Virus record (IMG/VR): IMGVR_UViG_3300025536_000010
Span: 1-64,000 of that record
DNA length: 64,000 nt
Direction: 5' to 3' (one strand)
This document shows, in pieces, positions 9,059 to 64,000 of the stretch (the stretch's first letter is position 1; every line of letters starts with the position of its first letter). Below the pieces are notes generated by a model. It had not been told where the DNA came from. It made no database searches and was given only the letters and a program-made list of their open reading frames with translations. Position numbers and translations under genes: made by a program.

Positions 9059-10576
9059 ATGCCGTTCAAGTCTAAGGCCCAGAAGGGCTGGATGTTTGCC
9101 AATCACCCCAAGATGGCTGAGCGCTGGGCTCACCACACGAAGGACATTAGCGCGCTGCCCGAACGTGTTGGCAGCAAGGAGAAGCAGTCGATGGACCAGA
9201 TCGCTGTCCTCGCCCGGCAGGCGGCCGAGTCTCGCTACGTCGAGAAGCTCGCCGCCGACACGGAAGTCACTCCGAGCCTGATTCGGCATTTTGCCGGCCA
9301 GGTCAAGTTGAGCCCGCTGGCCTTCTGCAAGCTGGCTTACGCGAACCCCGACCAGTACGTCACGTTTCTCAAGCTGGCGACCGGCGTCAAATTGACGCCG
9401 CAGCAGGTCAAGCACGCTGCCGGCGCGAACAAGCTGGTGGAGTTGCTGCTCAAGGCCAAAGGCGCTGTCGGCCAGGGTGCCAGCGCTGCTGGCGGTATGG
9501 CCAGTAAGGGCCTGGCCGCAGCTTCGCCCATCGCCAAGTCGACGCCCGGCAAGATCGGTGCGGGCGTGCTGGGCGCGGGTGGTATCGGTGCAGGCGCTTA
9601 TTCGCTGCTGGGCAGCGGTGGTGCGCCTGCTGGTCCCACGGAACAAGCGGCCAACCTGGGCTCGCAAATGTCGCAGCCGGCGGCGGCTCCCAAGGCCATG
9701 CCGCAAGCACCTTCGGGTAGCGCGCAAGGACCGAGCGCGGGCAGCGGTGGTGGCGTCGATCCCAAGCTGCTGGCCCTGGGCGGCGGCGCCGCTGCGCTGG
9801 GTCTGGGCGGTTACGCCCTGGCGCGGCGGCGCAAGCAGGAGAAGATGTCCAGGGACGAACTGGTCCGCGATGTCGTGCGGCGCGTGCTGGTGAAAAGAGC
9901 AGCGGCGACGATCAAGACGGGCGCGGCCAAAATCCTCAGTGCGCACCTGAACGAAGTGGCGGCGCTCATGCCGCTGGAGAAGAGTGCCGCGGTGCGCCAA
10001 CTCCAGAAAGCCGTCGCCGAGGGCAAACCGCTCAGCCAGGCTATCAAGCTGGCGTTCCCGCTGCTGAGCGGTGAACAGCGCGGCATCATGGCGGTGAAGC
10101 TGACCAAGGCAGCGACCGAGTGGTTCACGCGCAAGACTGCCAACGTGAACTGTGGCCCGAGCAGCGGGGCCATGCCGACGCAAACGATGCAGACGTTCAA
10201 CGGTCCCGCGGCCCAGGGCATGGACCAGCTGAGCAAGATGGCCGAAGTCGATCCGATGGCCACCGGGATTGGTGCGGGTGGCGGCGGTTTGCTCGGCGGC
10301 ATGGCCGGCAAAGGTGTGGGCAACTTCATGGCCAACAGCGGCCAGAGTATGCTGCGGCAGGGGATGCGCAGCAATGCGGGCAGCATGATGCGGGCTGGCC
10401 GGGCGCGCGTCAACGGAGCGGGTAAATGGGCTCCGATCCTGGCGTTGCTCGGCGCTGGTTTGGGTGGCGGGATCGGCGCTTCGGCGGGCGGGAAACCGTC
10501 GATTCAGCCGACGCCGCCTGGCATGGTCGGTAAAGGTTTCGGTGGTGCTGCTGGCGCCTTGCAGCAGCAGCCCTAG
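9059..10576 (+). CDS. Gly/Ala-rich putative virion (internal/ejected) protein
   Basis: N-terminal MPFKSKAQ..MFANHP..A..WA module seen in phage proteins; several glycine-zipper hydrophobic segments; many K-x-A motifs. Confidence 0.6.
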   Translation: MPFKSKAQKGWMFANHPKMAERWAHHTKDISALPERVGSKEKQSMDQIAVLARQAAESRYVEKLAADTEVTPSLIRHFAGQVKLSPLAFCKLAYANPDQYVTFLKLATGVKLTPQQVKHAAGANKLVELLLKAKGAVGQGASAAGGMASKGLAAASPIAKSTPGKIGAGVLGAGGIGAGAYSLLGSGGAPAGPTEQAANLGSQMSQPAAAPKAMPQAPSGSAQGPSAGSGGGVDPKLLALGGGAAALGLGGYALARRRKQEKMSRDELVRDVVRRVLVKRAAATIKTGAAKILSAHLNEVAALMPLEKSAAVRQLQKAVAEGKPLSQAIKLAFPLLSGEQRGIMAVKLTKAATEWFTRKTANVNCGPSSGAMPTQTMQTFNGPAAQGMDQLSKMAEVDPMATGIGAGGGGLLGGMAGKGVGNFMANSGQSMLRQGMRSNAGSMMRAGRARVNGAGKWAPILALLGAGLGGGIGASAGGKPSIQPTPPGMVGKGFGGAAGALQQQP

Positions 10577-10598
10577 ACGTCTTCCGTTTTGTCCCCCA

Positions 10599-10647
10599 AA
10601 CGGGTAAGGTCGTGACCGCGACCAAATCAGTCACGACCTTACCCGTT
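10599..10647. repeat. Perfect 18-bp inverted repeat (13-nt loop)
   Basis: AACGGGTAAGGTCGTGAC (10599-10616) / GTCACGACCTTACCCGTT (10630-10647). Confidence 0.9.
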
Positions 10648-10670
10648 CAGCCCAGCAAAGGAGAATCACC

Positions 10671-11288
10671 ATGATGAACCGTCGTGAAGCCTTGAAAGCC
10701 GGCCTGGCGAGTTTGCTGACGGCGCTGAGTCCGTTCAAGGCCGCTGCCGATCCTGTTGTGGAAGCGTATGTCGCCAATGGTTTCGTGAACGAGGAACGGG
10801 TAGGCGACGATCTGATCGAGACGTACGCTTTCACCCGTGGTGTGCTCTTGGTCGGCGACATGACTCCTGGCTTGCTGGTCGCCGATGGTTCGTTCAGCGT
10901 GACTGTGCGCAAGGTGCAGCCCCGTTGTGATGTCAGCGGCTTGTTCACGCATCTCCTGGGTCCGTATCCCATCATGCAGGCCACGCATGACATCTTTGGC
11001 GACTGGGAGCGCTCGAAGACGAGCTTCTGGCGTCTGGGCCTGCTCAAGACGGACAAGACCTCGGTGTGGTTCAAGATCTCAAAACCACTTTTTACCCAGA
11101 TCGGCGTGAGCGTGGTGGCCCGGGTCAACAAACCGGGACAAACAGACAACCGGGGCGACGAGTTCGTGCCCCAATTCCCTGGCGACGATGGCACGATGAT
11201 GGTGACGGAGTGGGCGAACTTCATGAGTTGCGAAGAACCCAAACTCTGTCCAGCACCCAAGGATTATCAAATCCCGGGAGCACGCTAA
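10671..11288 (+). CDS. Hypothetical exported protein with twin-arginine (Tat)-like signal
   Basis: MMNRREALKAGLASLLTALSPFKAAA; RBS AAAGGAG. Confidence 0.65.
   Translation: MMNRREALKAGLASLLTALSPFKAAADPVVEAYVANGFVNEERVGDDLIETYAFTRGVLLVGDMTPGLLVADGSFSVTVRKVQPRCDVSGLFTHLLGPYPIMQATHDIFGDWERSKTSFWRLGLLKTDKTSVWFKISKPLFTQIGVSVVARVNKPGQTDNRGDEFVPQFPGDDGTMMVTEWANFMSCEEPKLCPAPKDYQIPGAR
11078..11096 (+). repeat. Dispersed motif, weaker copy inside CDS
   Basis: CTCAAAACCACTTTTTACC. Confidence 0.4.
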
Positions 11289-11342
11289 CGTCGCAGCCGG
11301 TGCAAGAGCGCCCGCTAACTCAAGAAAGTCACGGAGGACGCT

Positions 11343-14300
11343 ATGAACCCAGCAGCCGCTCCAGGCCCCGTTATCAACAACATCAACGGCGGTATGGCCC
11401 AGCAGGGTCGGTTCTCGGGCATGTTCGGCATGCACCCGGGTTTCAACTTCATGGCGGCGACGCAGCACGCCCAGCGGAACCCAAATGCAGCGGCTCACCC
11501 GACGATTCCGCAGCAGGGTATGGCCACAGCGGGTGGAGTGCAGCAGGCCCTGCAAAAGGCGAGTTTCGCGGCGCGGGGAGATTACCTGGACGACGTGCTT
11601 TTCGAGCTTTGGGAGGGGCAGAAGCGGGCGGAAGCACAGACAGCGGGGTCGATGGCGGCCGGAGCGAGCGCAACTGCGCCTGCGGGTGGCCAAAATGGTG
11701 GGCAGCAGCCGAACAGGTCGACGCGGGGCATGATGGGTGGCGGTTATCGCGGTGCGCGCGGTGGTGGCGGGCAAAACCACGGAGTCGTGGGACAAACCAG
11801 CGGGCCGCAACCGCTCGTGGGGAACGTGAACCCACTCGGGCAAATGGGCAATCCGATGGCTACCGCCGCCCGACAAGGCATGGCGAGCCTCGCCCCCCGC
11901 CCCTTTGGGGGGACAATGGCCCCACAGCCGCTAAAAATGGCGATGATGGTGCCCGGTCCTGGCGGCATGGCTCCGAACCCAGGCGCCACGGCCCCCATGC
12001 CGCCGCCTCCGGGGCCTCCGGGCATGGCTGCGCCTGGTGGCGGTGGGCCGCTGCCGCCGCCTCCTCCGAATGGCGGCGCACCGATCCCCGGACAGCCTCC
12101 GGTCGACCCCATGACAGGCCAACCGATGGACCCTGCTGCGATGGGCGGCGGTGCGCCTCCGGGGCCTATCGACCCCATGACGGGACAACCTGTGCAGGCT
12201 CCAATGGCCTCGCCGCCGGCTCCGCCGTTGCCTGCTAACCCGCGGCCTGCGCAAGCCTCGCCCAAGGACAGCCAACAGGCCCAGCGGGAGGCAAACATGC
12301 TGCGCATGCTGGAGCAAAAACAGCAGTCGGAGGCATCTGCGACCCCGCAGGACGCCAACGATGACATCCAGGCGCAGAGCATGGCTTTGGCCAAGACGGC
12401 TGAGTCGCCTGGTATGCGGATGATGCGTGAGAACCACAACCGCATCACGCTGGGCGTGCTGGGCGAAGACCTCCGCCGCAAGTACGGTATGGGGCCGTTC
12501 TCCAAGCGTGCCTCCGAGAGTGATTCGTTCTCCGACATGAACGAGGACGATACGTTGGGCAGCCCCAAGGCCATGAGCAAAGGCTGGCAGTGGCGCTACA
12601 TGAACAAGGACGTCGACGAGGGCCTCAGTCAGTGGTTGCCCAGGCTGTTCAAGAGCCAGCACACGCCTGTCAGTGAACTGCTGGCCTCGCCGGGCAAGCA
12701 GGGGCTGCTCGGCGGCCTGGGCGGGCTCGCGTTGGGTGGCGCCGGCGGTGCGCTGGGCGCCCAACATCTCGGTGCAAACCCGGTGCTCGGTGGTTTAGGT
12801 GGCGCCGGGCTTGGGGCGATCCTGGGCGGCCTCAGCGGCTATGGCTCGCGCCGCAAGAAGAATGACAAGCTGATCGACGCCATGCGTTTCATGCCGCCGG
12901 GAGCCACACTGGGCGAGATGGACCAGCTGGAGGCAGCCAAGAAAGCACCCAAGCCAGACCCCATCGCCGGCTCGGCGGTCCAAAAACTGGCTTTTGAGAA
13001 ATTCGCCCAGGCGCTCAAGCAGAGCATGGAGGTCGAGCAGGCTGTCCCGCTCGGTCTGGCGGGCGTGGGCGCTGGTGTTGGTATGTTCGCTGGCGGTGCC
13101 CAGGGACGCGACCTGGCCCAACGGAACATGCAGGCCCAACTGCCCGGTCAGATCGAGGCCGCACGGCTCCAGCACCGCAACTCGATGAACCAGGGCCTCG
13201 ACAAGATGTACGGCCGTGGCCTCGACAACTGGGCGAAGCGGCGGGCGGGTATCCTCCAGGAACGCATGGCCATCGGCCCGGACGGCAATTTCAAGGTGCC
13301 GCGTCCGGCGGGGAATGAGGGCTGGGAGCGGATGCGCGATCAGCATGGGCAACTCGCGGCTTCGGGGCCACAGCTGCGCCAGGGTTTCAATCCGCAGCAG
13401 GCCGCAGCCGCCAAGCAGAAGTTCCTGGCTTCGGGGCAGGCTCAGCAGTTCATCCAGCAGCAACGTGGGGCCTGGCAGAACCAGCTGGGACGCATGCAGA
13501 GTCAGGCACCTGGACAGGTTGCCGCGGCCGGGCGTCGGGGCATGCTGCGCGGTGGTTTGGCGGGCGGTTTGGGCGGCCTGGCTGTGGCGAGCGCCCCCAT
13601 GCTCATGGGCATGTTCGGTGGTAAGCAGGCCGAGGATGGCAGCATCTATCTGGAGAAGCAGGCCAAGGAGGTCACCTACACGGACCCCAAAACGGGCAAG
13701 CAGGTGACGACGGACCATGAGGCCCTTGGTAAGAAATGCGCGGAGATGCTCTACAAGACCGTCGACGACGGGGACACGCAGCTTATCCACGCCGCCATGC
13801 TCGATCACCTGCTGCGTCTCAATAAGCGCTCGGCTGATGCCGAGCGTGACACAAACTGCCCGCTCTGCGGCATGCTGCACGAGTTCGGGCTGGCGTGCAG
13901 CACCAAAAAGGCCGAGCAAGAGGATACCAGTCTCAAGTCGCCCAACCGCAGCGCCTCGGGCGAGAGCAAGGGCCTGACCTTCGCGCACCGTGCGGACGAT
14001 CACGCCACGGGTCCAGCGGCCTGGCAGAGCATCGACCGTTTCCTCTCGAAAGACGTCACCGTGAAGACGGACCCCTACAAGGGCAAGCACGGCGGCACCA
14101 AGAAGGACACGGTCAACTACAAGCTCGCCGCCCTCAGTGGTGTCGAGTCGGGCTTGCTGGGCCTCAAGGGGCGCCTGATGCAGCCAGGCGGTTGGCTGGA
14201 TGAACTCATGGATGCCCAACGCAGCCCCGTTCAAGCGGGCGGTTCGACCTTTGGTACGCTGCCCAAACTCAAGCCACCCGATCTCAAGGGTTTGCTGGGC

Positions 14301-16139
14301 AAGCTCACGGGTGCTGCTCCCGCTGCGCCCACGGACGCGCCTGCGGATGCGCACCTGGCGCCGTTGCCGGTCGCGCTAGCCGGTGCGGGTATTGGTTTGG
14401 GCGGTGCCGGTCTGGGCTATGGCCTGGGCAAGCTGATGGGTAAGAAAAAGGAGGAACCCGAGAAGAGTGGGGCGGACGCTTTGCGGGAACTATCGCTGAG
14501 CCCGGCAGCCGTGGGCTTCTTCGACTACTGCGACCGTTTGGGCCTCGACGCGACCCAGGTCAAACAGGCTGTCGACGTGGCGTGTGCCAAGTTCCCCGAA
14601 GCGGAAGGAGAACTGCGTCATGGCCTCGCCAAGCGAGCCCAGGCGCAGGTGCCCTTTTGCCTGGAGAAACAGGCGAACAAGTTGCGTGGGATGCTGAACG
14701 CCGGCAAGAGCGCCTGGGGCTGGATGCGCGGGGCCAAGCCCGTCATGGCGCAGGGCCTCCAGACCGCTCCGGTGACCAGGGCGACAGCTTCACCATTGGT
14801 GCAGCAGGCGGCGCAACTGCGGCAGGCGACGCCTGGCCTGGGCGTACAGCAGGCGATGGCGCAGGCGCGCTCGCAGCAGCCTGGCATGCAGGGCGTCTTC
14901 AATAACTACATGCGCGGTGCCACGCCCTACTCGGTGGCTTCGTCGGTCGGCCAAACGGCGATGGGTGGCCTCGGCGGTGCTTTCGCTGGCGAAGAACTGG
15001 GCCTACCTGGCGGTGGTTGGACTGGGGCCGCAGCTGGTGCGTTGGCCATGAACCCGATGGCCCGGCGCTTCATGGCCAGGAACCCCAGGAGCCTGGCTCA
15101 GCCCTTCATGCGGGGCGGGCAAGGAGCCATCGGCGGCGGTTTCGCCGGCAGCGCGATCGACCAGACAGCGGGTGCTCTGGGTTACGACACCAACGGGCGT
15201 TTCGCTCAGGCCGGTGCCGGGTTCGGTTTGCTTGCTGGCGGCGGACGCGGCCTCGCAGCCATGCGTGTCGCTCGCCACGGTGCGTTCTTGCCGGGCGTGA
15301 TGGCGCAGGCGTCCAAGATGTCGGGACCAGCGCGTGCGGACTTCTTGGCCAAGAACATGAGCATGGCGGGCCAGGTCAACTCGCTGGGCGCCAAGGCTAC
15401 GCAGGGCCTGGAGCAGTTCGCGCGTGGTTCAATGGCTCCCCTCACGGGCGTCGGCAAGACGGGCTGGAACCTGATGACGGGGGCCAAGAACCCGTTCAGC
15501 AGTGCCTGGAAGGGTGCGGTTCCGGGCACTCGTCTGGGACGCATTGGCGCTACCGTGGGCGGCGTTGGCATGGGCGCCACGGCGCTGGGCATGGGCTCGG
15601 AGTACCTCCATAACCGATTCAGCAACGCGGTCGATGAAAAGCTGGGCGACGTCTACAACCAGGCCATGCCGCAATTCCAGGATGATGCGGCGGGCTTCCT
15701 CGACCAGTACATGCAGAGTCGGGGTCTGATGAACGAGCAGGGCCAGTTCGATCCCATGCAGACGGTCAACCGCAACGGCGGCATCATGGGCAGCATGATG
15801 CAGGGCAGCGACAAGATCTTCCAGGGCCTGGGCATGGACCCGAGTCGCATGAGCCCCATGCAGAAGATGATGATTATGGGCGGCGCACTCGGCCTGGGCG
15901 GCGGGGCAATGGGCGGTTCGCCGGGCGTGGCAGGCGCAGGCGGCCTTGCCATGATGGGCGGGCTTCTGCCTACACTGATGCAGGGTCAGGGGCAGGGCGG
16001 ACAACGCTATTCGGGCTACAACCCGATGCAGCAGCAGTCGGCCCCTGGTTACGAAGGCCAGGCGCCTGGACAGAACCCGAACTCCCCACAGGCCCGCAAC
16101 GAATGGCTGCACCAGCAACAACTCCAGCAGGGAGGTTAA
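11343..16139 (+). CDS. Giant (1598 aa) Gly/Pro/Met/Gln-rich putative virion/ejection polyprotein
   Basis: RBS GGAGG; Pro-rich region with DPMTGQP x2; repeated glycine-zipper segments; K-x-A motifs between blocks. Confidence 0.65.
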   Translation: MNPAAAPGPVINNINGGMAQQGRFSGMFGMHPGFNFMAATQHAQRNPNAAAHPTIPQQGMATAGGVQQALQKASFAARGDYLDDVLFELWEGQKRAEAQTAGSMAAGASATAPAGGQNGGQQPNRSTRGMMGGGYRGARGGGGQNHGVVGQTSGPQPLVGNVNPLGQMGNPMATAARQGMASLAPRPFGGTMAPQPLKMAMMVPGPGGMAPNPGATAPMPPPPGPPGMAAPGGGGPLPPPPPNGGAPIPGQPPVDPMTGQPMDPAAMGGGAPPGPIDPMTGQPVQAPMASPPAPPLPANPRPAQASPKDSQQAQREANMLRMLEQKQQSEASATPQDANDDIQAQSMALAKTAESPGMRMMRENHNRITLGVLGEDLRRKYGMGPFSKRASESDSFSDMNEDDTLGSPKAMSKGWQWRYMNKDVDEGLSQWLPRLFKSQHTPVSELLASPGKQGLLGGLGGLALGGAGGALGAQHLGANPVLGGLGGAGLGAILGGLSGYGSRRKKNDKLIDAMRFMPPGATLGEMDQLEAAKKAPKPDPIAGSAVQKLAFEKFAQALKQSMEVEQAVPLGLAGVGAGVGMFAGGAQGRDLAQRNMQAQLPGQIEAARLQHRNSMNQGLDKMYGRGLDNWAKRRAGILQERMAIGPDGNFKVPRPAGNEGWERMRDQHGQLAASGPQLRQGFNPQQAAAAKQKFLASGQAQQFIQQQRGAWQNQLGRMQSQAPGQVAAAGRRGMLRGGLAGGLGGLAVASAPMLMGMFGGKQAEDGSIYLEKQAKEVTYTDPKTGKQVTTDHEALGKKCAEMLYKTVDDGDTQLIHAAMLDHLLRLNKRSADAERDTNCPLCGMLHEFGLACSTKKAEQEDTSLKSPNRSASGESKGLTFAHRADDHATGPAAWQSIDRFLSKDVTVKTDPYKGKHGGTKKDTVNYKLAALSGVESGLLGLKGRLMQPGGWLDELMDAQRSPVQAGGSTFGTLPKLKPPDLKGLLGKLTGAAPAAPTDAPADAHLAPLPVALAGAGIGLGGAGLGYGLGKLMGKKKEEPEKSGADALRELSLSPAAVGFFDYCDRLGLDATQVKQAVDVACAKFPEAEGELRHGLAKRAQAQVPFCLEKQANKLRGMLNAGKSAWGWMRGAKPVMAQGLQTAPVTRATASPLVQQAAQLRQATPGLGVQQAMAQARSQQPGMQGVFNNYMRGATPYSVASSVGQTAMGGLGGAFAGEELGLPGGGWTGAAAGALAMNPMARRFMARNPRSLAQPFMRGGQGAIGGGFAGSAIDQTAGALGYDTNGRFAQAGAGFGLLAGGGRGLAAMRVARHGAFLPGVMAQASKMSGPARADFLAKNMSMAGQVNSLGAKATQGLEQFARGSMAPLTGVGKTGWNLMTGAKNPFSSAWKGAVPGTRLGRIGATVGGVGMGATALGMGSEYLHNRFSNAVDEKLGDVYNQAMPQFQDDAAGFLDQYMQSRGLMNEQGQFDPMQTVNRNGGIMGSMMQGSDKIFQGLGMDPSRMSPMQKMMIMGGALGLGGGAMGGSPGVAGAGGLAMMGGLLPTLMQGQGQGGQRYSGYNPMQQQSAPGYEGQAPGQNPNSPQARNEWLHQQQLQQGG
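12980..12998 (-). repeat. Dispersed motif copy inside CDS (reverse orientation)
   Basis: Reverse complement CTCAAAAGCCAGTTTTTGG. Confidence 0.6.
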
Positions 16140-16140
16140 G

Positions 16141-16299: not shown

Positions 16300-16300
16300 C

Positions 16301-55944: not shown

Positions 55945-56397
55945 ATGACGACCAAGAAAGGGGAGTCCCCTGAAAATCTGCTCATGATTGTCGGGCAACT
56001 GCTGGAGGCCACCAAAGCAGCATCGGACGGCTTGAAAAGTCTTAGCCTTGAAGTGCGCAACAACGCCAGCGCTATCATCAGCGCCGCAAAGACTTTGGAG
56101 TTTGTCGAAAAGACGATCAGCGAACTGAACGCCGTGGTGCGGGCTAACGCGGATTCGTTGGTGTCCCAAACGGCCGAGAACGCTGCGGCTATCGAGGACT
56201 TGCAGACGGGTAAAGCGGAACTCGACAAGGCGGTTGACGAGCTACAACAGATGGTCGACACCTTGGGCGTCGACCGCGTAAAAGCGGACCACTCCCGCGA
56301 CCTCGTCTGGAAGATCATCTACGGCGCCGCCTGGGCCATCACCACCGGCATTGCCGTCTACGCCGCCCTGGGACAGTGGGCGGCCATCAAGCCGTGA
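55945..56397 (+). CDS. Coiled-coil protein with C-terminal TM helix
   Basis: Heptad pattern followed by IIYGAAWAITTGIAVYAALG. Confidence 0.7.
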   Translation: MTTKKGESPENLLMIVGQLLEATKAASDGLKSLSLEVRNNASAIISAAKTLEFVEKTISELNAVVRANADSLVSQTAENAAAIEDLQTGKAELDKAVDELQQMVDTLGVDRVKADHSRDLVWKIIYGAAWAITTGIAVYAALGQWAAIKP

Positions 56398-56404
56398 GGT
56401 AATC

Positions 56405-56959
56405 ATGTCGATCCTGGCCACACACGATGGCCCTCCCCCGTGGGCGAGGGCCATGTTCACCTTGGGGCAAGAGAAAGCCGCGGCAGTCGCGGACCCGCCC
56501 CAGGTGTCTTACGACCTTGCCGGCCAGTTGTTCCTGGCGGCCAACGGTTGGCTGCTCCTGTCCGTGCCGAACGCTTTCGTTCACGGCCTCTATGCTACCA
56601 TCGACGAGCGCGGCGTAGAGTTACCGCCAGGCAAAGACGGCGGGCCGATGAACGCGCACATCAGTGTGATGAAACCGAAAGAGATTGAGCTACTCGGCGG
56701 GGCCGACAAGATCAGCGAGCGCGGCAAGCAGTTCCACTATACGATCAGCCGCCTGTACACAGTCGAGCCGTCAGGCTGGCCGGAGATGAGCAAAGTCTGG
56801 TTTGTGCGCGTTCACTCGCCAGAGTTGCAGGAGTTGCGGAGGAGTTACGGGTTGTCGTCCCTACCCAACGACGGGAAGCATGACTTCCATATTAGCGTCG
56901 CCGTCAGAAGGAGGGGCGTCTTGGGTAGGAACGACAACCGTAAAGGCGAGGCAGCTTAG
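56405..56959 (+). CDS. 2H phosphoesterase-family protein
   Basis: Two HxS motifs (AHISV, FHISV) about 76 aa apart. Confidence 0.7.
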   Translation: MSILATHDGPPPWARAMFTLGQEKAAAVADPPQVSYDLAGQLFLAANGWLLLSVPNAFVHGLYATIDERGVELPPGKDGGPMNAHISVMKPKEIELLGGADKISERGKQFHYTISRLYTVEPSGWPEMSKVWFVRVHSPELQELRRSYGLSSLPNDGKHDFHISVAVRRRGVLGRNDNRKGEAA

Positions 56960-57210: not shown

Positions 57211-57226
57211 AGGGTAAGGATACCCT
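57211..57226 (+). promoter_or_regulatory. AGGA-loop hairpin (CsrA-site-like) in leader of the 57260 gene
   Basis: AGGGTA-AGGA-TACCCT, then SD AAGGAG at 57244. Confidence 0.6.
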
Positions 57227-57259
57227 CTTTTGGGGGACAAAGCAAGGAGATTTAGAAAC

Positions 57260-58453
57260 ATGCTAGACTTCGCTGTCCCCACCCTGACCCGCTACGACAC
57301 CATCGTCGCAGCGCTAGCCGGGCTTGAGAAGCTGGCGCTCACCGCCTCACAGCTTACCCGCGAAGCCGCCAAAGTCGACCCCAATCCGACTGACGCCCAG
57401 AAGGAGAGCGGCAACTACCGCAAAGGCCACGTCGCCTGGAAGGGTCTGAACATCACTATCGAGACGGCGGCTGGTCAGGTCCGCCGCGGGGTGGGCAAGG
57501 ATGGCAAGCCGTGGCAGACCAAGATGAGGGACCACTATGGCTATGTTAAAGGTACTGTCTCCGACGCAGACGGAGATCATGTCGACGTGTTCATTAGTTG
57601 CGACCAGCAGCCCGATACCAGGGGGCCGCAGCGAGCCCAACCGGGGTGGGGATGGCTTCGCTCGGAACTCGTCCACGTTATCAACCAGGTCGACCCCGAT
57701 ACCGGCAAGTTCGACGAGCACAAGGTTGTGCTGGGCTGCCTGGATGAAGAGTCTGCGCGCCAATCTTACCTGCGCAACTATGAACCGGGGTGGCAAGGAC
57801 TTGGGTCGGTCACTGCCCTCACCCTGCCGCAGTTCAAATGGTGGCTCGACCGCGCCGACACGTCTAAGGAAATCAAAGAAGGGTTTTTTGCAGCACCGGC
57901 GAATCGTAAGAAATCAGCGACCGACCTGATCCAAAAAACGGCTTTTGACGCCACTGCCACACACATCCTGGTCGTCAAGCGCGCCGAGGACCGCGAAACG
58001 CCTTTCACCGTCGCTGTTGATCTGGACGGCACCCTGGCCGAAAAAGAGGAACCGTTCGACCCAACCTCTATCGGTACGCCGCGCCAGAAAGCCATTGACT
58101 ACGTTCGTCTCTTCCGCGAAGCGGGGGCACGGATTATCATCTTCACGGTTCGCGGCGACAAAGAGTTGGTGGAGGCGTGGCTGGAGGAACACGACGTTCC
58201 CTACGATTACGTCAACGAGAACCCGGACCAGCCCGAAGACGCTTCGGGTAAGGTCATCGCCGACGCTTACTGGGACGACAAGGCGTTCAACGCCGAAGAC
58301 CCGGATGAGTTCGGACCCACGATCCTGCGGAAGGTCATGGGAGGCAAGGACGAGGCGCACGCTGCGCCTGCGCTCCACATCACAGTGGTCAAGAACACGA
58401 CGTTCGTGTTCTCGGCCCCGGAGTTACTGGATGCCATGAAGGAGGCCGCATGA
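57260..58453 (+). CDS. Phage inorganic-pyrophosphatase-like (InPase) domain fused to HAD phosphatase
   Basis: PTDAQKESGNYRKGH..HYGY..DGDHVDVF..FDEHKVVLG; then VDLDGTLA, IFTVR, KVIADAYWDDKA. Confidence 0.8.
   Translation: MLDFAVPTLTRYDTIVAALAGLEKLALTASQLTREAAKVDPNPTDAQKESGNYRKGHVAWKGLNITIETAAGQVRRGVGKDGKPWQTKMRDHYGYVKGTVSDADGDHVDVFISCDQQPDTRGPQRAQPGWGWLRSELVHVINQVDPDTGKFDEHKVVLGCLDEESARQSYLRNYEPGWQGLGSVTALTLPQFKWWLDRADTSKEIKEGFFAAPANRKKSATDLIQKTAFDATATHILVVKRAEDRETPFTVAVDLDGTLAEKEEPFDPTSIGTPRQKAIDYVRLFREAGARIIIFTVRGDKELVEAWLEEHDVPYDYVNENPDQPEDASGKVIADAYWDDKAFNAEDPDEFGPTILRKVMGGKDEAHAAPALHITVVKNTTFVFSAPELLDAMKEAA
57931..57949 (-). repeat. Dispersed motif copy inside CDS (reverse orientation)
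   Basis: Reverse complement GTCAAAAGCCGTTTTTTGG. Confidence 0.6.
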
Positions 58454-58878: not shown

Positions 58879-58898
58879 CGGGCAAGGACGTGGCAAGG

Positions 58899-59363
58899 AT
58901 GGCACTGGAAGTTCATACGATCCAGGAGCCTCTGTGGATCAGAGCCCTGGTTGAGGAGGTCGTCAAGGAGGCGATGTGGCCGTTGGGCTTCATTGGGCCG
59001 CTCGGTTTTCGTTACTGGGAGCCCGAGGCCCCAACCAATACGTTCGCGGGTTGGCAGGTGGTGGTCTACCCCACCCTGAACGAGGCGGCTGGTCCTCACA
59101 AGCACGACGGCAACAAGTTCGTGAGTGGGTTTCGCCTGAACGTGGGCCACATCGTCACGGCGATGGGTGGCTCGGTGGAGAGTATAGTTTGGAACTCTCC
59201 AGTAGGTTATAATGGAGACTTGGATGGCCCGGAGATCAGCGTGCAGGGACACTTTTGCGGAAAGCACGTCTGGCTTCGTGTCTTCCACTTACCGCCGCCA
59301 GATGAGCCGGTGGCGTGCTACGTTGACCTGCAAACAGGTCGCGCGTGGGCGCACTCGGCTTAA
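58899..59363 (+). CDS. Hypothetical protein
   Basis: GPLGFRY, WQVVVYPT, DG..GF.L pattern. Confidence 0.65.
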   Translation: MALEVHTIQEPLWIRALVEEVVKEAMWPLGFIGPLGFRYWEPEAPTNTFAGWQVVVYPTLNEAAGPHKHDGNKFVSGFRLNVGHIVTAMGGSVESIVWNSPVGYNGDLDGPEISVQGHFCGKHVWLRVFHLPPPDEPVACYVDLQTGRAWAHSA

Positions 59364-59444
59364 TGATGCTGGTGGTCCTGTAACCGCGGGGCATGGTCGC
59401 ATCCGCGGCGTTAGACGGTGTTCTACATCCCAATGGAGGTTGCC

Positions 59445-61811
59445 ATGCAAGATGGCGCTTCGACGGTAACTGCTGCGCGCGCAGCGAATCAGACGTTCTC
59501 TCGTAACGGCTCCAAGCCGTACACACCCGAGGAGTTGTCGGGCGAGTGGACGTGCAAGAAGAGGGACGGCAAGGTCGTCCCGTTCGACCCCAGGAAGATC
59601 CGCCAAGCACTGCGGAAGTGCTTTGCGTCCCTGGGTGAGGCGGTCGAACAGCACACTGACAAGCACGACGAAGTCATCGAGAAGATTACGACGTCGGTCT
59701 GTAACATCCTCGCGGCCCAGAAGAAAAACTGCCCCGATGTCGAGGCAGTGCAGCAGCTGGTGATTCAGCAGCTGTGGGTCGAGGGCATGTTCCAGTACGC
59801 CGAGCATTATCAGAACTACCGCGAGGAGCGGCGCAAGGCTCGGCTGCACAAGCCCATCCCGGAAGAAGTCGTCCAGCGCGTGCTGGCCGACCAGAAGCAT
59901 TTCCCCACCGACCTCCAGTATTACCAGTTCATGGGGAAGTTCTCGCGTTGGCGCGAGGCCGAAAAGCGCCGCGAGACGTGGCACGAGACGGTTCACGAGC
60001 GCGTCATGCCCTGGTTCCAGCGGCTGCCGCTGGTGCAGGGTAAGCTGACCGCAGCCGAGTGGGCCGAACTCACAGACGCCATGTATAAGCTGGAGGCGTC
60101 GCCCGCGATGCGGGTGGTGCAGATGGCCGGGCCGGCGCTGGACCGCTGTCATGTCGGGGTCTACAACTGCGCCTACCAGCCGATTGAAGACCTTTTCTCT
60201 TTCCCGGAACTGCTCTACATCCTCATGCAGGGCACCGGGGCTGGCTTCTCGGTCGAGTCCGACTATGTCGGCGAACTACCGCGCATCAAAAAGCAGCGCG
60301 GCAAACCGGCGGAAACCATCGTCGTACCCGACAGCACCGAGGGCTGGTGCAACTCCTACTTCAAAGGCATCGAACGCTGGTGGGACGGCTACGACGTCCA
60401 CTACGATGTCAGCGGTGTGCGCAGGCAGGGTAGCCGGCTCAAAACCAAAGGCGGGCGTGCCAGCGGACCAGGGCCGTTTCTGGAACTGATGGCGTTCACA
60501 CGCAACATCGTCATGGCACGCCAGGGACGCTACCTGGAAGACACGGACGCGCACCGTCTGGCCTGTTTCACCGGCCGCATTGTTCAGGTTGGCGGCGTGC
60601 GGCGGGCCGCTACCATCTCCATCTCCGACCTGCTGTCGCTGGGCATGCGCCACATCAAAGGCGGCAACTGGTACAACGACACGACCTACTGGACGGACGG
60701 CAAGTACCTCACGATGGCCAACAACTCGGCCTGCTACGAGGCACGCCCGCCCATCGACGTGTTCATGCGCGAGTTCCTGGCCCTGGTCGAATCCAAATCG
60801 GGCGAGCGCGGCATCTTCAACCGACAGGCCATCATCGAGACGCGACCGGCGCGGCGGAAGAAAGCCAAGTTCGGCATGAACCCGTGCGCCGAGATCGTGT
60901 TGCGGCCGTACGAGTTCTGCAACTTGACCATCGTCATCGCCCGCGCGGACGACACGGTCGAGAGCTTGAAGCGGAAGGTGCGCATCGCCACGATCTTCGG
61001 CCTCATGCAGTCGACCTGCACCGACTTCAAATACATCCGCCCGAAATGGAAGGAGAACTGCGAGGACGAGCGGCTGCTCGGCGTCGACATTACCGGCCAC
61101 GCCGACTGCCCGCTGCTGCGCTACGGCGCGGCAGGGCGAGCCGACCTGTTGCGCTTGCTCAAGAAAGTCGTCCACGACACGAAAGCCGAGTACGCCCCAC
61201 GGTTCGGGATCAACCTGTCGGCGGCTGACACCTGCGTCAAGCCTGGCGGCGACTCGGGCGTGTTTTTCGACTGCGCCTCGGGTATCAGCGCACGGTTCTC
61301 GGACTTCCAGCTGCGCTGGGTGCGCGAGTCTAAGGACAGCCCGATCGCGCATTTCCTAATGGACTCGGGCGTGCCTTGGGCACCGGCGCCGGAAGCCCCG
61401 AACGAACTGCTCGTTTTCGGTTTCCCCAAGAAGTCGCCGTTCGGGTCGACAACGCGGAACCAGCTGAACGCCATCGAGCAGCTGGAGAACTGGTTTGAGT
61501 GGAAGCGCGAGTGGGCTGAGCACTCGGTCAGCTGCACCATTTACGTCGAGGACCATGAGTGGCTCCAGGTCGGGGCCTGGTTGTACGACATCGAGCACTG
61601 GAAGTACCTCAGCGGCCTCAGTTTCCTGCCCAAGGACAATGGCGTGTACACTTACGCGCCCAACGAGGAGTTGACCAGCGAGCGGTACGAGGAGGCCAAG
61701 GCGGCCTTTCCCGAATTGAACTGGTCAAAACTCCAGCACTACGAAGAGGAGGACAACACAGGGGCGGCGCAGACATTTGCCTGCACCGGCGATCTGTGTG
61801 AGCGTGTCTGA
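59445..61811 (+). CDS. nrdJ: Class II ribonucleotide reductase with N-terminal ATP-cone
   Basis: KKRDGKVVPFD..KI (ATP-cone), YNCAY, VGGVRRAA, NPCAE catalytic motif, FCNL, TCVKP, C-terminal CTGDLC. Confidence 0.92.
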   Translation: MQDGASTVTAARAANQTFSRNGSKPYTPEELSGEWTCKKRDGKVVPFDPRKIRQALRKCFASLGEAVEQHTDKHDEVIEKITTSVCNILAAQKKNCPDVEAVQQLVIQQLWVEGMFQYAEHYQNYREERRKARLHKPIPEEVVQRVLADQKHFPTDLQYYQFMGKFSRWREAEKRRETWHETVHERVMPWFQRLPLVQGKLTAAEWAELTDAMYKLEASPAMRVVQMAGPALDRCHVGVYNCAYQPIEDLFSFPELLYILMQGTGAGFSVESDYVGELPRIKKQRGKPAETIVVPDSTEGWCNSYFKGIERWWDGYDVHYDVSGVRRQGSRLKTKGGRASGPGPFLELMAFTRNIVMARQGRYLEDTDAHRLACFTGRIVQVGGVRRAATISISDLLSLGMRHIKGGNWYNDTTYWTDGKYLTMANNSACYEARPPIDVFMREFLALVESKSGERGIFNRQAIIETRPARRKKAKFGMNPCAEIVLRPYEFCNLTIVIARADDTVESLKRKVRIATIFGLMQSTCTDFKYIRPKWKENCEDERLLGVDITGHADCPLLRYGAAGRADLLRLLKKVVHDTKAEYAPRFGINLSAADTCVKPGGDSGVFFDCASGISARFSDFQLRWVRESKDSPIAHFLMDSGVPWAPAPEAPNELLVFGFPKKSPFGSTTRNQLNAIEQLENWFEWKREWAEHSVSCTIYVEDHEWLQVGAWLYDIEHWKYLSGLSFLPKDNGVYTYAPNEELTSERYEEAKAAFPELNWSKLQHYEEEDNTGAAQTFACTGDLCERV

Positions 61812-61856
61812 CGGCATCAAGGAGGGGCCGGGCGAACAGCCTGGCCCCGCCTCGTT

Positions 61857-62342
61857 ATGAGCGATTTCCTTGAGGACGACATGAACGAGATCACGGACGA
61901 GTTGCGTGCGGCGTACGGACGCCGACCGCGGGTGCAACGGTGGCAACTCCAGGGTGCCTCGGAGGAACTGCTGGAGTTTCTGGCCCACGTTTTCGACGAG
62001 GCGACGTTGCGCCTGATGGTGTTTTGTGAATCTCCCGCCACGGGGACGCAATATCTGATCCCCGCCGACCGTTGGGGCGGCAAGACGCCGAAGTTCAACC
62101 TCAACGTCGACAGTACCTGGTGGGACTGCAAACCGCAGCCAGGCACAACCTGGCAGCACTACAAAGGCGGGCGTTACCGCGTCGTGCAGAACGCCCACCA
62201 CGTCCTGACAGGCCGGCACTTCGTCATCTACCGTTCCGAGACGGATGGGACGCGCTGGGCCAGGGACGCGGAGTCGTGGTTCAGCCTGGTCAATAACGGC
62301 CAGGACAGGAAAACCTACCGCTTCAACCCGGCCAACAAGTAG
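61857..62342 (+). CDS. DUF1653-domain protein
   Basis: WQHYKGGRYRV...VIYRS...WARD..W. Confidence 0.75.
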   Translation: MSDFLEDDMNEITDELRAAYGRRPRVQRWQLQGASEELLEFLAHVFDEATLRLMVFCESPATGTQYLIPADRWGGKTPKFNLNVDSTWWDCKPQPGTTWQHYKGGRYRVVQNAHHVLTGRHFVIYRSETDGTRWARDAESWFSLVNNGQDRKTYRFNPANK

Positions 62343-62368
62343 CTCGGGGAGCGGCGGCAAGGTATACT
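62340..62368 (+). promoter_or_regulatory. Sigma70-like promoter
   Basis: TAGCTC-N17-TATACT. Confidence 0.45.
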
Positions 62369-62383
62369 CTGTACGGAGGCACT

Positions 62384-62983
62384 ATGGTTGCCGCGAAAAG
62401 GCGAACGGCAAAGAGCGACGATCTGCGTAAGAAGAAATACGGCAAGCTGAGAGTTCTCTCGCTGCTCCGCACCGAGTCGAACGTAGGTCGAATCTGGCAG
62501 TGTCGCTGCAAGTGTGGCAAATTGACAGAGGCGTCCACCGGCAAGCTCGTTTGCGGGCACAAAACCAGTTGCGGCTGTGGACGCAAAGCGAGGGCGGCGG
62601 CGCTCGTTCGGAAGGGTACGCGGCACCCGAAGTGGAAAGGTTACGAGGGGATTACCGGATCGCTGTGGCACCGAATCCGAGCCAGTGCCGCAGCGAGAGG
62701 TATCTCGTTCGAGATCACGATTGAGGAAGCCTGGGAACTGTACCAGGCGCAGGAAGGCCGCTGTAAGTTGTCCGGCGTGCCGCTTTATATGGTCAAGAAC
62801 TCGTTCGCGCTGGCCAACGGCGCAAACACGGCATCGCTCGACCGTATCGACAACGAGAAAGGTTACGTTGTCGGGAACGTGCAGTGGGTGCATACGGTCA
62901 TCAATTACATGAAAGGCACGTTACCGCAGCTTGAGTTTCTTAGTTGGTGCCGTATGGTCGCGGAACGCGACCTACCACAGTAG
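62384..62983 (+). CDS. Free-standing HNH-type homing endonuclease-like protein
   Basis: YGKLRVL..WQCRCKCG..GHKTSCGC; ASLDRIDNEKGYVVGNVQWVH..IN.MK. Confidence 0.8.
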   Translation: MVAAKRRTAKSDDLRKKKYGKLRVLSLLRTESNVGRIWQCRCKCGKLTEASTGKLVCGHKTSCGCGRKARAAALVRKGTRHPKWKGYEGITGSLWHRIRASAAARGISFEITIEEAWELYQAQEGRCKLSGVPLYMVKNSFALANGANTASLDRIDNEKGYVVGNVQWVHTVINYMKGTLPQLEFLSWCRMVAERDLPQ

Positions 62984-63000
62984 CTCGTTAGGAGGCAAGG

Positions 63001-64000
63001 ATGCGCTGGGAAGAGATCCCGCTGGTCACGGATGACTGGGCCGTCAAAGTCGCTGCCCCGGCGTACGACATCCGTTGTGCCGTGGCCGGTGTCTACACGG
63101 CAGTTCCTATCGGTGTCTACTACCACCCGGGCCTGGAAAAAGCCGCGCTGTTCCCGCAAGGGACCGACGCTGCCGACCAGGCCCGGGTGCTCGCTGCGAC
63201 TGAGCGCGCGGTTGGACCCTCCGGGGTCCGACCGCTTTTTCTTACCTATCAGGAGGTGGGGGCTCCCGAAACCCAGTGGGTCAAGGTCGCCTACTCGCCC
63301 ACGCTGCGACGTCTCGGCGAGGCCACAAACTTCTTCCCCGGGCAGTACCCAGGCGGGCTGCCCAACCACCCGTCGCCGGTCGCGGCCATGCTGACGTCCG
63401 GCCTGGTCGGGGCGGGCCTCGGCTGGGGCGGCGGCAAGCTCCTCAACAAGTTGCTGCCCGAGCGCTTCGGGGACAACCTGGGGCGGACGGGCCTGATCCT
63501 CGGCGGCTTGCTGGGGGCTGCCCCCGGCGCCGCGTGGGGCGGTGTCAACACGCTGACCGGCAACCGCTTTAACGACTCCTCCCTCACGCAGGGCGACCCA
63601 CTCCAGGCAGACCTGCTGTTTCCGCGAGCGATGGACGGCTCCAACGCCGTACCGCCGGCGCAGGGGGCCGCGCCGCTTGAAGGGATCAAGGACTTCGTCA
63701 CCACGCAGCGCAGCGTGAACCCCAAGAAGCTGCTCAAATTCTCCGAGGATCTGGAGGCCGTACCGTTGGGCAAACGCTACCAGGCGGCCGTCGACCTGGT
63801 CAAAGAAGCCTTCGGGGACTCTTTCGGCGCGGAACCGGACGACCTGGGACCGACGCCGCTGGACGTCAACGTGAACAGCCTGGGGCAGACGCTTTGGCAG
63901 GCTGGAGCTACGCCGCGTCTGGCAGCCTCCACGATGGGCGCCATGTTCGCCGCTCAGCAGTTCCCCGACGCGCGGGCGCAGCCTGGTCTAGTGACGGCTC
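63001..64000 (+). CDS. Putative virion protein, 3' truncated by window edge
   Basis: RBS AGGAGG; hand translation MRWEEIPLVTDDWAVKVAA... is open to base 64000; glycine-zipper segments and K-x-A motifs. Absent from the ORF track because it has no stop. Confidence 0.75.
   Translation, partial: MRWEEIPLVTDDWAVKVAAPAYDIRCAVAGVYTAVPIGVYYHPGLEKAALFPQGTDAADQARVLAATERAVGPSGVRPLFLTYQEVGAPETQWVKVAYSPTLRRLGEATNFFPGQYPGGLPNHPSPVAAMLTSGLVGAGLGWGGGKLLNKLLPERFGDNLGRTGLILGGLLGAAPGAAWGGVNTLTGNRFNDSSLTQGDPLQADLLFPRAMDGSNAVPPAQGAAPLEGIKDFVTTQRSVNPKKLLKFSEDLEAVPLGKRYQAAVDLVKEAFGDSFGAEPDDLGPTPLDVNVNSLGQTLWQAGATPRLAASTMGAMFAAQQFPDARAQPGLVTA

What the first reader, a model, noticed from the sequence alone, without database searches (positions are those of the whole stretch)
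9059..64000. K-x-A motifs at domain boundaries of virion-like proteins and two enzymes: possible maturation-protease code
Seen: EKLA, VKRA, EKSA, RKTA (9059 protein); AKTA, SKRA, QKLA, GKQA, EKQA, YKLA, AKRA (11343 protein); AKQA (3148); EKAA just before the 2H domain; EKLA before InPase with KKSA/QKTA/VKRA clustered between InPase and HAD; VKVA, EKAA, VKEA (63001). A rough manual count gives about 13 of 38 Lys (9059) and 16 of 68 Lys (11343) with Ala at +2, roughly twice the Ala frequency. Established: jumbo-phage head proteases cut inner-head proteins at short motifs (for example S/A/G-X-E in phiKZ). Inference: these are polyproteins cut at K-x-A, releasing ejected modules and enzymes.
Basis: partly seen in the sequence, partly recalled or inferred. 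Interest (0 to 1): 0.62.

Follow-up and report, generated by a model that had tools for sequence, protein, structure and literature searches.

The report
Lys-x-Ala cleavage code of a jumbo-phage head protease
A short Lys-x-Ala motif is strongly over-represented, one-directional and conserved in the head-assembly proteins of this 235-kb phage and hundreds of relatives, and is most likely the cutting signal of their T4-like capsid-maturation protease, a signal not found in the searched literature.

Summary
Shuffle p-values are only 0.005-0.015, which does not survive testing about 210 proteins. The strong evidence lies outside the window. A head-gene module at 81.7-95.9 kb and one gene at 166.9 kb hold proteins with 3-4 times the expected K-x-A and almost no mirror A-x-K. 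The richest (19 observed, 4.9 expected) has a predicted N-terminal domain with the fold of T4 prohead protease gp21 (Z 11.1). In homologues of that protein, 12-20 K-x-A are kept with a free middle residue. The capsid protein has one conserved site near its N-terminus. The enrichment recurs next to the homologous protease in Salmonella phage Arash, Vibrio phage D69 and Bacillus phage G. The same statistic recovers T4's known L/I-x-E code. Homologue families of the window proteins 9059, 11343 and 63001 keep K-x-A at fixed positions, so they are probable substrates. Tubulin and the 2H protein are at chance, and InPase-HAD is weak. In the 9059 model the sites lie inside helices, not at domain boundaries. 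Cleavage itself is inferred and has not been shown.

The parts
9059..10576 (+). 505-aa protein with 13 K-x-A. It has two helical modules (residues 1-138 and 260-363), a disordered linker and a disordered tail. It is a probable multi-site protease substrate. Family-conserved sites are K63 (nt 9245-9253), K91 (9329-9337), K105 (9371-9379), K118 (9410-9418), K279 (9893-9901), K308 (9980-9988), K330 (10046-10054), K350 (10106-10114) and K359 (10133-10141).
11343..16139 (+). 1598-aa protein with 17 K-x-A. It is a probable multi-fragment substrate. Sites kept in divergent homologues are K94 (nt 11622-11630), K198 (11934-11942), K351 (12393-12401), K388 (12504-12512), K855 (13905-13913) and K1097 (14631-14639).
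63001..64000 (+). First 333 residues of a 406-aa protein that ends at genome position 64221. It has four K-x-A, all with E or V before the Lys: K16 (nt 63046-63054), K47 (63139-63147), K95 (63283-63291) and K268 (63802-63810). Across 117 homologues, K95 is kept in 115 of 118 sequences and K268 in 96 of 115.
57230..58453 (+). InPase-HAD fusion protein (407 aa). K-x-A sites lie at K34 (nt 57329-57337), before the InPase domain, and at K228, K236 and K250 in the interdomain linker. There is no enrichment in the single sequence, so this is only a weak lead as a substrate.
56351..56959 (+). It has a single EKAA at K41 (nt 56471-56479), which is chance level. Pfam 2H model PF13563 finds nothing in the genome.
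3326..4603 (+). Tubulin/FtsZ-family protein. It has 3 K-x-A against 2.6 expected, so no enrichment, and it is not part of the system.

Best explanation
K-x-A is the recognition motif of the phage's prohead (capsid-maturation) protease.

**The protease.** It is the 507-aa product of genome positions 88759-90282, outside the window (L002:8060-9583). Its predicted N-terminal domain, about residues 1-240, has the T4 gp21 / herpesvirus assemblin fold. Its C-terminal half is helical.

**Proposed mechanism (inferred).**
- Inside the prohead the protease cuts at K-x-A. By analogy with T4 L/I-x-E, phiKZ/SPN3US A-x-E and herpesvirus V/L-x-A, Lys would be P3 and Ala P1. The flank preferences would then be hydrophobic at P5, E/V/Q/T at P4, small or acidic at P1', and D/A at P2'.
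- It removes a roughly 32-residue N-terminal peptide from the capsid protein.
- It chops scaffold-like proteins, long propeptides and finally itself into peptides of about 10-60 residues that can leave the shell.
- It processes internal proteins encoded elsewhere in the genome, including the window proteins 9059, 11343 and 63001.

**Shown.** The motif's enrichment, directionality and conservation, its recurrence in unrelated proteins, and its co-occurrence with this protease clade are shown. The predicted protease fold matches gp21.

**Inferred.** That the motif is cut, which bond is cut, and that the window proteins enter the capsid.
For: 1. **Position-chosen scan.** In the 14 consecutive head-module genes (81699-95889), K+2A is the top of 1,639 residue-pair/offset combinations (72 observed, 28.9 expected, z 8.0). 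K+4D is third. R-x-A, L/I-x-E and S/A/G-x-E are at expectation.
2. **Per-protein counts against expectation, with the mirror A-x-K count**:
   - 88759: 19 vs 4.9 (A-x-K 2)
   - 166900: 16 vs 4.4 (2)
   - 81699: 17 vs 6.0 (1)
   - 85967: 12 vs 3.6 (2)
   - 90339: 10 vs 3.9 (2)
   - The rest of the genome is at 1.06 times expectation.
3. **Protease fold.** The AF2 model of 88759 has pLDDT 85. VIA-align gives Z 11.1, rmsd 3.2 Å and 151 of 164 residues aligned to T4 gp21 (5jbl), followed by herpesvirus proteases at Z 4-5.5. The homologue phage G gp19 is called a head maturation protease in bioRxiv 10.1101/2024.12.16.628780.
4. **Conservation in the protease family.** 114 metagenomic homologues average 17.1 K-x-A against 4.4 expected, with 2.4 A-x-K. 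About ten sites are at least 90% conserved while the middle residue varies. 79 orthologues from viral contigs with 40-69% GC carry 12-20 each.
5. **Within-protein control in four relatives.** K-x-A retention against retention of A-x-K, K-A and K-x-x-A:
   - 88759: 58/76 vs 18/56
   - 85967: 26/47 vs 7/47
   - 90339: 21/31 vs 5/24
   - 9059: 16/23 vs 12/35
   - 63001: 10/16 vs 4/20
6. **Capsid protein.** It has a single site, K30, kept in 4 of 4 relatives. The homologous place is K27 in both Arash and D69.
7. **Cultured phages.** In whole-genome scans of Arash and D69, the most K-x-A-enriched ORFs are the protease's neighbours. Phage G gp19 and gp21 are also enriched.
8. **Positive control.** The same statistic recovers T4's known code: L/I-x-E is 16 vs 5.8 in gp22 and 7 vs 2.6 in gp21.
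9. **No paralogy.** The K-x-A-rich proteins show no detectable similarity to one another.
10. **Parallels with SPN3US gp245.** That protease cuts after a P3-x-P1 motif, prefers V at P4 and a small residue at P1', cuts propeptides at several sites and cleaves itself (PMC10052503).
Against: - No proteomic or biochemical evidence of cleavage exists for any member of this clade.
- Many conserved sites lie inside predicted helices or inside the folded catalytic domain. They would be accessible only after unfolding or earlier cuts.
- The published virion mass spectrometry of Arash detected gp220, gp222, gp223 and gp225 with 80-100% tryptic coverage (PMC10585845). At least some uncut copies were therefore present in that preparation. 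That study did not search semi-specific peptides.
- The phage G capsid protein has no K-x-A.
- The protease matches neither Pfam Peptidase_S77 nor the T4 gp21 sequence. The relationship rests on a predicted fold.
- p-values pooled over homologues are inflated by shared ancestry.
Confidence: 0.7

Rival explanations
1. K-x-A is a docking or capsid-targeting motif. It would be bound, but not cut, by the protease's helical C-terminal half, a scaffold or the shell interior. Its role would be to recruit proteins into the prohead.
For: - The sites sit in helices of scaffold-like modules.
- Arash K-x-A-rich proteins are detected in virion preparations with high coverage.
- The motif's recurrence in unrelated proteins fits any trans-acting reader, not only a protease.
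Against: - It does not explain seven conserved sites inside the protease's own catalytic domain.
- The single N-proximal site in the capsid protein is the classic position of a maturation cut.
- The distribution over scaffold, protease and capsid protein copies that of T4's proven cleavage motif.
Confidence: 0.15
2. The motif is a site of lysine modification or cross-linking in head proteins, for example an isopeptide bond or acylation, with Ala at +2 as part of the enzyme's recognition.
For: Lys is strictly required. R-x-A is not enriched (25 observed, 24.6 expected).
Against: - No candidate modifying enzyme was found; this was not searched systematically.
- 12-20 sites per 500-aa protein is far denser than known capsid cross-links.
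- The link to the protease clade and the T4-like distribution are left unexplained.
Confidence: 0.05
3. There is no trans-acting reader. K-x-A would be a by-product of composition, helix geometry or shared ancestry of a helical repeat.
For: - Polar-x-hydrophobic pairs at +2 are mildly enriched genome-wide.
- The window proteins alone reach only p of about 0.005-0.015.
Against: - The mirror A-x-K is depleted in the same proteins.
- Shuffles within 30-aa blocks give the same p-values as global shuffles.
- Offsets 1, 3 and 4 are flat.
- The K-x-A-rich proteins are not paralogues.
- The signal holds from 40 to 69% GC.
- The middle residue varies while Lys and Ala are kept.
Confidence: 0.05

Closest known systems
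T4 prohead protease gp21 and its L/I-x-E code (PDB 5jbl)
   Same: - The predicted catalytic-domain fold matches (Z 11.1).
- The protease gene lies upstream of the capsid gene in a head-gene module, separated from it by three genes that include the scaffold candidate.
- The three-residue motif has a free middle position.
- The motif is enriched in the scaffold and in the protease itself, and the capsid protein has a single N-proximal site.

   Different: - There is no sequence similarity (hhalign probability 0.09; no Pfam S77 match).
- The motif is K-x-A, not L/I-x-E, and L/I-x-E is at expectation here.
- The protease carries a helical C-terminal half of about 260 residues and a Cys-rich insertion.
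phiKZ gp175 / SPN3US gp245 prohead proteases (S/A/G-x-E, A-x-E)
   Same: - These are jumbo-phage settings with many head and internal proteins processed.
- Propeptides are cut at several motif copies.
- The protease cleaves itself.
- There is a preference for V at P4 and a small residue at P1'.

PMC10052503.
   Different: - The P1 residue would be Ala rather than Glu, and P3 would be Lys rather than a small residue.
- S/A/G-x-E is not enriched here (60 observed, 63 expected).
- tblastn with the 9059, 11343, tubulin-like, 63001 and 166900 proteins found nothing in the 'phages' collection, and the protease matched only phages outside the phiKZ group.
Herpesvirus assemblin (V/L/I-x-A|S)
   Same: - The fold class is the same (Z 4-5.5).
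- P1 would be Ala and P1' small, if the cut follows the Ala of K-x-A.
   Different: - P3 is hydrophobic in herpesviruses and Lys here.
- Only two sites exist per herpesvirus substrate, against up to 19 here.

Membership tests
gp21/assemblin-fold prohead serine proteases | Catalytic-domain fold shared with T4 gp21 and herpesvirus proteases | tested here: met
   The AF2 model has pLDDT 85. VIA-align gives Z 11.1, rmsd 3.2 Å and 151 of 164 residues aligned to 5jbl_B, followed by herpesvirus proteases at Z 4-5.5. The top three Foldseek hits are gp21 chains.
gp21/assemblin-fold prohead serine proteases | Sequence match to Pfam Peptidase_S77 or to T4 gp21 | tested here: not met
   PF03420 has no match in the genome at E up to 1. 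hhalign of the family profile against T4 gp21 gives probability 0.09. A PDB sequence search with the profile finds nothing.
gp21/assemblin-fold prohead serine proteases | Conserved catalytic Ser and His | tested here: inconclusive
   H65, H106 and S167 are invariant across 113 sequences. They were not mapped onto the gp21 active site, because no residue-level structural alignment was available.
gp21/assemblin-fold prohead serine proteases | Gene lies in the head module next to scaffold-like and major capsid genes | tested here: met
   The protease is at 88759-90282. The capsid protein is at 92989-93930 (phrog_2522, E 3e-5). The same order is seen in Arash (gp222 to gp226), D69 and phage G.
gp21/assemblin-fold prohead serine proteases | Cleaves head proteins at a short P3-x-P1 motif | not testable with these tools
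   Only the motif statistics and conservation are available. No peptide-level data were held for Arash.
phiKZ-type S/A/G-x-E or T4-type L/I-x-E cleavage code | Enrichment of that motif in the protease, scaffold and head proteins | tested here: not met
   In the head module, S/A/G-x-E is 60 observed against 63 expected, and L/I-x-E is 36 against 31.6. K-x-A is 72 against 28.9.
   - Tubulin and the 2H candidate are at chance (p 0.5).
- InPase-HAD gives p 0.18-0.27. Its K34 site is aligned and kept in the one fused orthologue, and the linker has 3 unaligned K-x-A in both proteins.

The most novel reading that the evidence does not exclude
K-x-A is a clade-wide address-and-release code. It would mark every protein that enters the capsid of these roughly 180-500-kb phages. 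That would include enzymes such as the InPase-HAD fusion, which would be packaged as pro-proteins, cut in their linkers and delivered to the host with the DNA. The ejected proteome of about 290 mostly uncultivated phages could then be read from sequence alone.
Probability: 0.2. Interest if true: 0.75.

Novelty: new variant of a known kind. Interest (0 to 1): 0.62.

Why it matters
- Prohead-protease codes are known for only a few phages, such as T4, phiKZ/201phi2-1 and SPN3US. They are the key to reading which head and internal proteins are processed.
- A K-x-A code would add a third specificity, Lys at P3 and Ala at P1, to the gp21/assemblin fold.
- It would apply to a very large clade: 293 viral contigs and more than 940 protein clusters. 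The clade reaches cultured phages, namely Salmonella phage Arash, Vibrio phages D69/D148/D181 and, more distantly, phage G.
- It gives a sequence-only way to nominate scaffold, propeptide and internal or ejected proteins among genes that currently have no annotation.
- It is directly testable with existing phage stocks and possibly with existing raw mass-spectrometry files.

Tried and rejected
- **tblastn against the 'phages' collection.** The 9059, 11343, tubulin-like, 63001 and 166900 proteins found nothing. Megablast of 9059-16139 also found nothing.
- **PHROG and Pfam scans of the K-x-A-rich proteins.** They gave no functional name. The only matches were phrog_1375 (first ~30 residues of 9059), phrog_2774 (protease) and phrog_2522 (capsid protein).
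- **Pfam models searched in the genome.** PF03420 (Peptidase_S77) and PF13563 (2H) had no match. The '2H' label therefore rests only on two H-x-T/S motifs.
- **Position weight matrix of the flanks.** It separated head-protein sites from other K-x-A sites only weakly (leave-one-out mean -1.6 against -2.5). It was dropped in favour of simple counts and conservation.
- **Pooled family p-values.** They are quoted but not relied on, because homologues are not independent. In family-wide pair scans many conserved pairs score high.
- **Complex prediction.** The protease domain with capsid-protein residues 1-60 gave no verdict (score 0.04). This is not evidence either way.
- **ESM Atlas look-ups.** Those for 63001 and 11343 gave only scores below 0.85 and no usable fold.
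- **Arash supplement.** It holds gene and protein sequences only, with no peptide lists.
- **Literature search.** Searches for K-X-A or KxA with prohead, protease, capsid or phage found no relevant paper. Papers outside the held library cannot be excluded.
- **Gene calls.** They come from a crude GC3-based ORF picker of my own. Some starts may be wrong; for example, the 11343 family has an N-terminal K-x-A column that the query lacks.


Full report
**Setting.** The window is the first 64 kb of a single 234,886-bp viral contig with 62% GC. I called genes with a simple GC3-based ORF picker, giving 248 genes that cover 88% of the genome. The window encodes a tubulin/FtsZ-family protein (3326-4603), a class II-like ribonucleotide reductase (59418-61811) and an InPase-HAD fusion (57230-58453). 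Downstream lie multisubunit RNA-polymerase pieces, a collagen-repeat protein and a baseplate J protein. Only genetic code 11 was used. No reads tools were used.

**The observation.** The 9059 protein has 13 K-x-A among 38 Lys (6.6 expected). The 11343 protein has 17 among 73 (10.0 expected). With 20,000 shuffles, p is 0.007 for 9059 and 0.015 for 11343. Shuffling only within 30-residue blocks gives 0.009 and 0.005, so local composition is not the cause. These values do not survive correction for about 213 proteins. The other proteins named are at or near chance: 63001 at 0.11, InPase-HAD at 0.18-0.27, the 2H candidate at 0.5 and tubulin at 0.5-0.65.

**Where the signal really is.** Genome-wide, K-x-A ranks third of 400 pairs at offset 2 (453 observed, 354 expected). 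Offsets 1, 3 and 4-7 are flat. The two pairs ranked higher come from the collagen-repeat protein. The excess sits in a few proteins outside the window and runs in one direction only:

| Protein (genome start) | K-x-A observed | Expected | Mirror A-x-K |
|---|---|---|---|
| 88759 | 19 | 4.9 | 2 |
| 166900 (minus strand) | 16 | 4.4 | 2 |
| 81699 | 17 | 6.0 | 1 |
| 85967 | 12 | 3.6 | 2 |
| 90339 | 10 | 3.9 | 2 |

The proteins at 91783 and 95012 are also enriched. Without these proteins and one low-complexity Lys/Ala/Pro-rich protein (205440), the rest of the genome is at 1.06-1.10 times expectation.

To avoid circular selection, I took the 14 consecutive genes at 81699-95889 by position alone. 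There, K+2A is the top of 1,639 residue-pair/offset combinations (72 observed, 28.9 expected, z 8.0), and K+4D is third. R-x-A (25 vs 24.6), K-x-S/G, L/I-x-E (36 vs 31.6) and S/A/G-x-E (60 vs 63) are at expectation. Flank preferences are L/F/M at -2, E/V/Q/T at -1 and D/A at +4.

**What these proteins are.** The 92989 protein matches a major-head-protein PHROG (E 3e-5). The 88759 protein belongs to a large metagenomic family with more than 940 hits, some carrying inteins. Its AF2 model (pLDDT 85) has a beta-rich N-terminal domain and a helical C-terminal half. The three best Foldseek hits are chains of T4 prohead protease gp21. VIA-align gives Z 11.1, rmsd 3.2 Å and 151 of 164 residues aligned to 5jbl, then herpesvirus proteases at Z 4-5.5. 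There is no sequence-level match to Peptidase_S77, to T4 gp21 or to any PDB chain. His65, His106 and Ser167 are invariant. A distant homologue, phage G gp19, is described as a head maturation protease in bioRxiv 10.1101/2024.12.16.628780. The phage therefore encodes a gp21-fold prohead protease in a T4-like head-gene module. That protease is itself the most K-x-A-rich protein in the genome.

**Conservation.**
- *Metagenomic homologues of the protease.* Across 114 members at 51-75% identity, the mean is 17.1 K-x-A against 4.4 expected, with 2.4 A-x-K. About ten sites keep Lys and Ala in at least 90% of members while the middle residue varies. At K347, for example, it is C, V, T or M.
- *Viral-contig orthologues.* In 79 orthologues at 35-67% identity and 40-69% local GC, the count is 12-20. 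On average 45% of all lysines are followed by Ala at +2.
- *Four related genomes.* I fetched G002, G003, G004 and G006 (50-69% GC). For each protein I compared retention of K-x-A with retention of A-x-K, K-A and K-x-x-A in the same protein:

| Protein | K-x-A retained | Control motifs retained | p |
|---|---|---|---|
| 88759 | 58/76 | 18/56 | 4e-7 |
| 85967 | 26/47 | 7/47 | 4e-5 |
| 90339 | 21/31 | 5/24 | 6e-4 |
| 166900 | 36/48 | 18/39 | 5.5e-3 |
| 9059 | 16/23 | 12/35 | 8.7e-3 |
| 63001 | 10/16 | 4/20 | 1.2e-2 |

- *Genome-wide.* 75 of 374 K-x-A sites are conserved, against 21-25 of 264-333 for each control motif.
- *Capsid protein.* It has exactly one K-x-A, at K30. It is kept in 4 of 4 relatives and sits at the homologous place (K27) in Arash and D69.
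- *Paralogy.* The K-x-A-rich proteins share no detectable similarity. The motif has therefore been imposed independently on unrelated sequences, which points to a trans-acting reader.

**Replication in cultured phages and a positive control.** The protease has distant homologues in Vibrio phages D69, D148 and D181, Salmonella phage Arash (gp222), Bacillus phage G (gp19) and a mycobacteriophage. K-x-A counts next to those genes are as follows:

| Phage | Protein | K-x-A observed | Expected |
|---|---|---|---|
| Arash | gp220 | 10 | 3.0 |
| Arash | gp223 | 8 | 3.0 |
| Arash | gp225 | 7 | 1.8 |
| D69 | 268 | 11 | 4.0 |
| D69 | 271 | 10 | 2.9 |
| D69 | 273 | 6 | 1.5 |
| Phage G | gp19 | 8 | 2.5 |
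| Phage G | gp21 | 7 | 2.8 |

In whole-genome scans of Arash and D69, the most enriched ORFs are these neighbours of the protease. K+2A is not a genome-wide feature in either phage. The same statistic applied to T4 recovers the experimentally known gp21 code. L/I-x-E is 16 vs 5.8 in scaffold gp22, 7 vs 2.6 in gp21 and 5 vs 2.0 in gp68, again in one direction only.

**The window proteins.**

*9059.*
- 32 homologues together have 363 K-x-A against 204 expected, with 174 A-x-K. E/V/Q/T precedes the Lys in 159 sites against 70 expected.
- The columns at K63, K91, K308 and K330 are K-x-A in 29-33 of 33 sequences with a variable middle residue.
- The AF2 model (pLDDT 68 overall, above 90 in the modules) shows two helical modules at 1-138 and 260-363, a 110-residue disordered linker and a disordered tail.
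- Twelve of the 13 K-x-A sites lie inside the predicted helices, one lies in the disordered tail, and none lies in the linker. The sites therefore do not mark domain boundaries. The spacing of 9-45 residues resembles a degradable scaffold or propeptide.

*11343.*
- 12 divergent homologues have 139 against 80.4 expected, with 64 A-x-K. All twelve are above expectation.
- K-x-A recurs at the columns of K94 (8/10), K198 (8/12), K351 (9/12), K388 (7/11), K855 (6/13) and K1097 (10/12).
- This fits cutting into several large fragments.

*63001.*
- 117 homologues have 568 against 200 expected, with 134 A-x-K.
- K95 is kept in 115 of 118 sequences and K268 in 96 of 115.

*InPase-HAD.* The only fused orthologue keeps the aligned site before the InPase domain. 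It also has three unaligned K-x-A in the linker. This is a lead and no more.

*52081, tubulin and the 2H candidate.* None shows a conserved signal.

Pooled family p-values overstate significance because homologues share ancestry. The weight is therefore on multi-site positional recurrence, the mirror-motif control and the recurrence across unrelated families.

**Mechanism proposed.** T4 uses L/I-x-E and herpesviruses use V/L-x-A followed by Ser (my own knowledge). SPN3US uses A-x-E as P3-P2-P1, with V at P4 and Ser at P1' (PMC10052503). By analogy, I propose that K-x-A occupies P3-P2-P1 and the cut follows Ala. The observed flanks would then be E/V/Q/T at P4 and small or acidic residues at P1' and P2'. 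If every site were cut, the protease would be reduced to fragments of 6-59 residues. This matches the self-destruction and clearance known for T4 gp21 and gp22 (my own knowledge). It also matches the multi-cut propeptides of SPN3US. The cleavage itself, the scissile bond and the encapsidation of the window proteins are all inferred.

**Caveats.**
- No peptide-level data exist for this clade.
- Arash virion mass spectrometry detected gp220, gp222, gp223 and gp225 with 80-100% tryptic coverage. Uncut copies were therefore present in that preparation.
- Many sites lie in folded or helical regions.
- The phage G capsid protein lacks the site.
- A complex prediction of the protease domain with the capsid-protein N-terminus gave no verdict and is not used as evidence.

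**Novelty.** The searchable library holds no paper pairing K-x-A with a prohead protease. The Arash paper mentions neither a protease nor cleavage. I rate this a new variant of a known kind: a gp21/assemblin-fold maturation protease with a new and unusually dense recognition motif, shared by a large and mostly uncultivated jumbo-phage clade.

Noticed in passing
whole genome (G000), all proteins outside the K-x-A-rich set: The mirror pair A-x-K is itself enriched in the rest of the genome (366 observed, 295 expected, ratio 1.24), while K-x-A there is at 1.06. No explanation was found.
   Followed up: no
window 3326-4603: A tubulin/FtsZ-family protein (PF00091, E 8e-11) occurs together with multisubunit RNA-polymerase genes at 66967, 72027 and 76486. 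This gene set recalls nucleus-forming jumbo phages. However, tblastn of the tubulin found no match among 50,697 phage records.
   Followed up: partly
window 9059-9180 (first ~40 residues of the 9059 protein): This N-terminal module (phrog_1375) also occurs as stand-alone 50-70-aa proteins and at the N-terminus of many otherwise unrelated proteins of up to 1,000 aa in the 1.8-billion-protein library. It may be a shared targeting or interaction module.
   Followed up: no
genome 205440-207611 (L009:1161-3332): A 723-aa low-complexity protein has acidic runs alternating with EKPAKKGK-like basic repeats. Its K-x-A and A-x-K counts are both high (21 and 24), so it was excluded from the motif analysis.
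   Followed up: no
genome 95977-99897 (L002:15278-19198): A 1306-aa protein with collagen triple-helix repeats (PF01391, E 1.5e-61) lies just after the head module. It accounts for the genome-wide G-x-Q and P-x-P excess.
   Followed up: partly
homologues of the protease (P0051, P0071, P0074, P0107, P0110): Some members of the protease family are about 880 aa long and carry intein or homing-endonuclease domains (PF14528, PF13403, PF14890). The RNA polymerase beta subunit of this genome has a weak intein-splicing hit at residues 994-1046 (E 0.0098).
   Followed up: no
genome 66967-70113 (L001:3978-7124), RNA polymerase beta: One R-K-x-A site at K95 is kept in 4 of 4 relatives with a variable middle residue. 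Overall K-x-A retention is 13/36 against 6/53 for control motifs. In Arash the RNA polymerase beta subunit was the protein with the most spectra in the virion preparation. This site could mark N-terminal processing of a packaged polymerase.
   Followed up: partly
window 63001-64000 and its family: The 63001 family shows very strong Gly-x-x-x-Gly periodicity (G+4G, 1540 observed, 715 expected over 118 sequences). This suggests glycine-zipper segments.
   Followed up: no
Salmonella phage Arash OQ632216.1 174466-175335; Vibrio phage D69 OZ195729.1 170872-171723: Each cultured phage has one strongly K-x-A-enriched ORF far from the head module (8 vs 3.5 in Arash; 10 vs 2.3 with no A-x-K in D69). 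This is analogous to the isolated 166900 gene in this genome.
   Followed up: no
It was not picked by my gene caller, and I did not assess whether it is coding.
   Followed up: no
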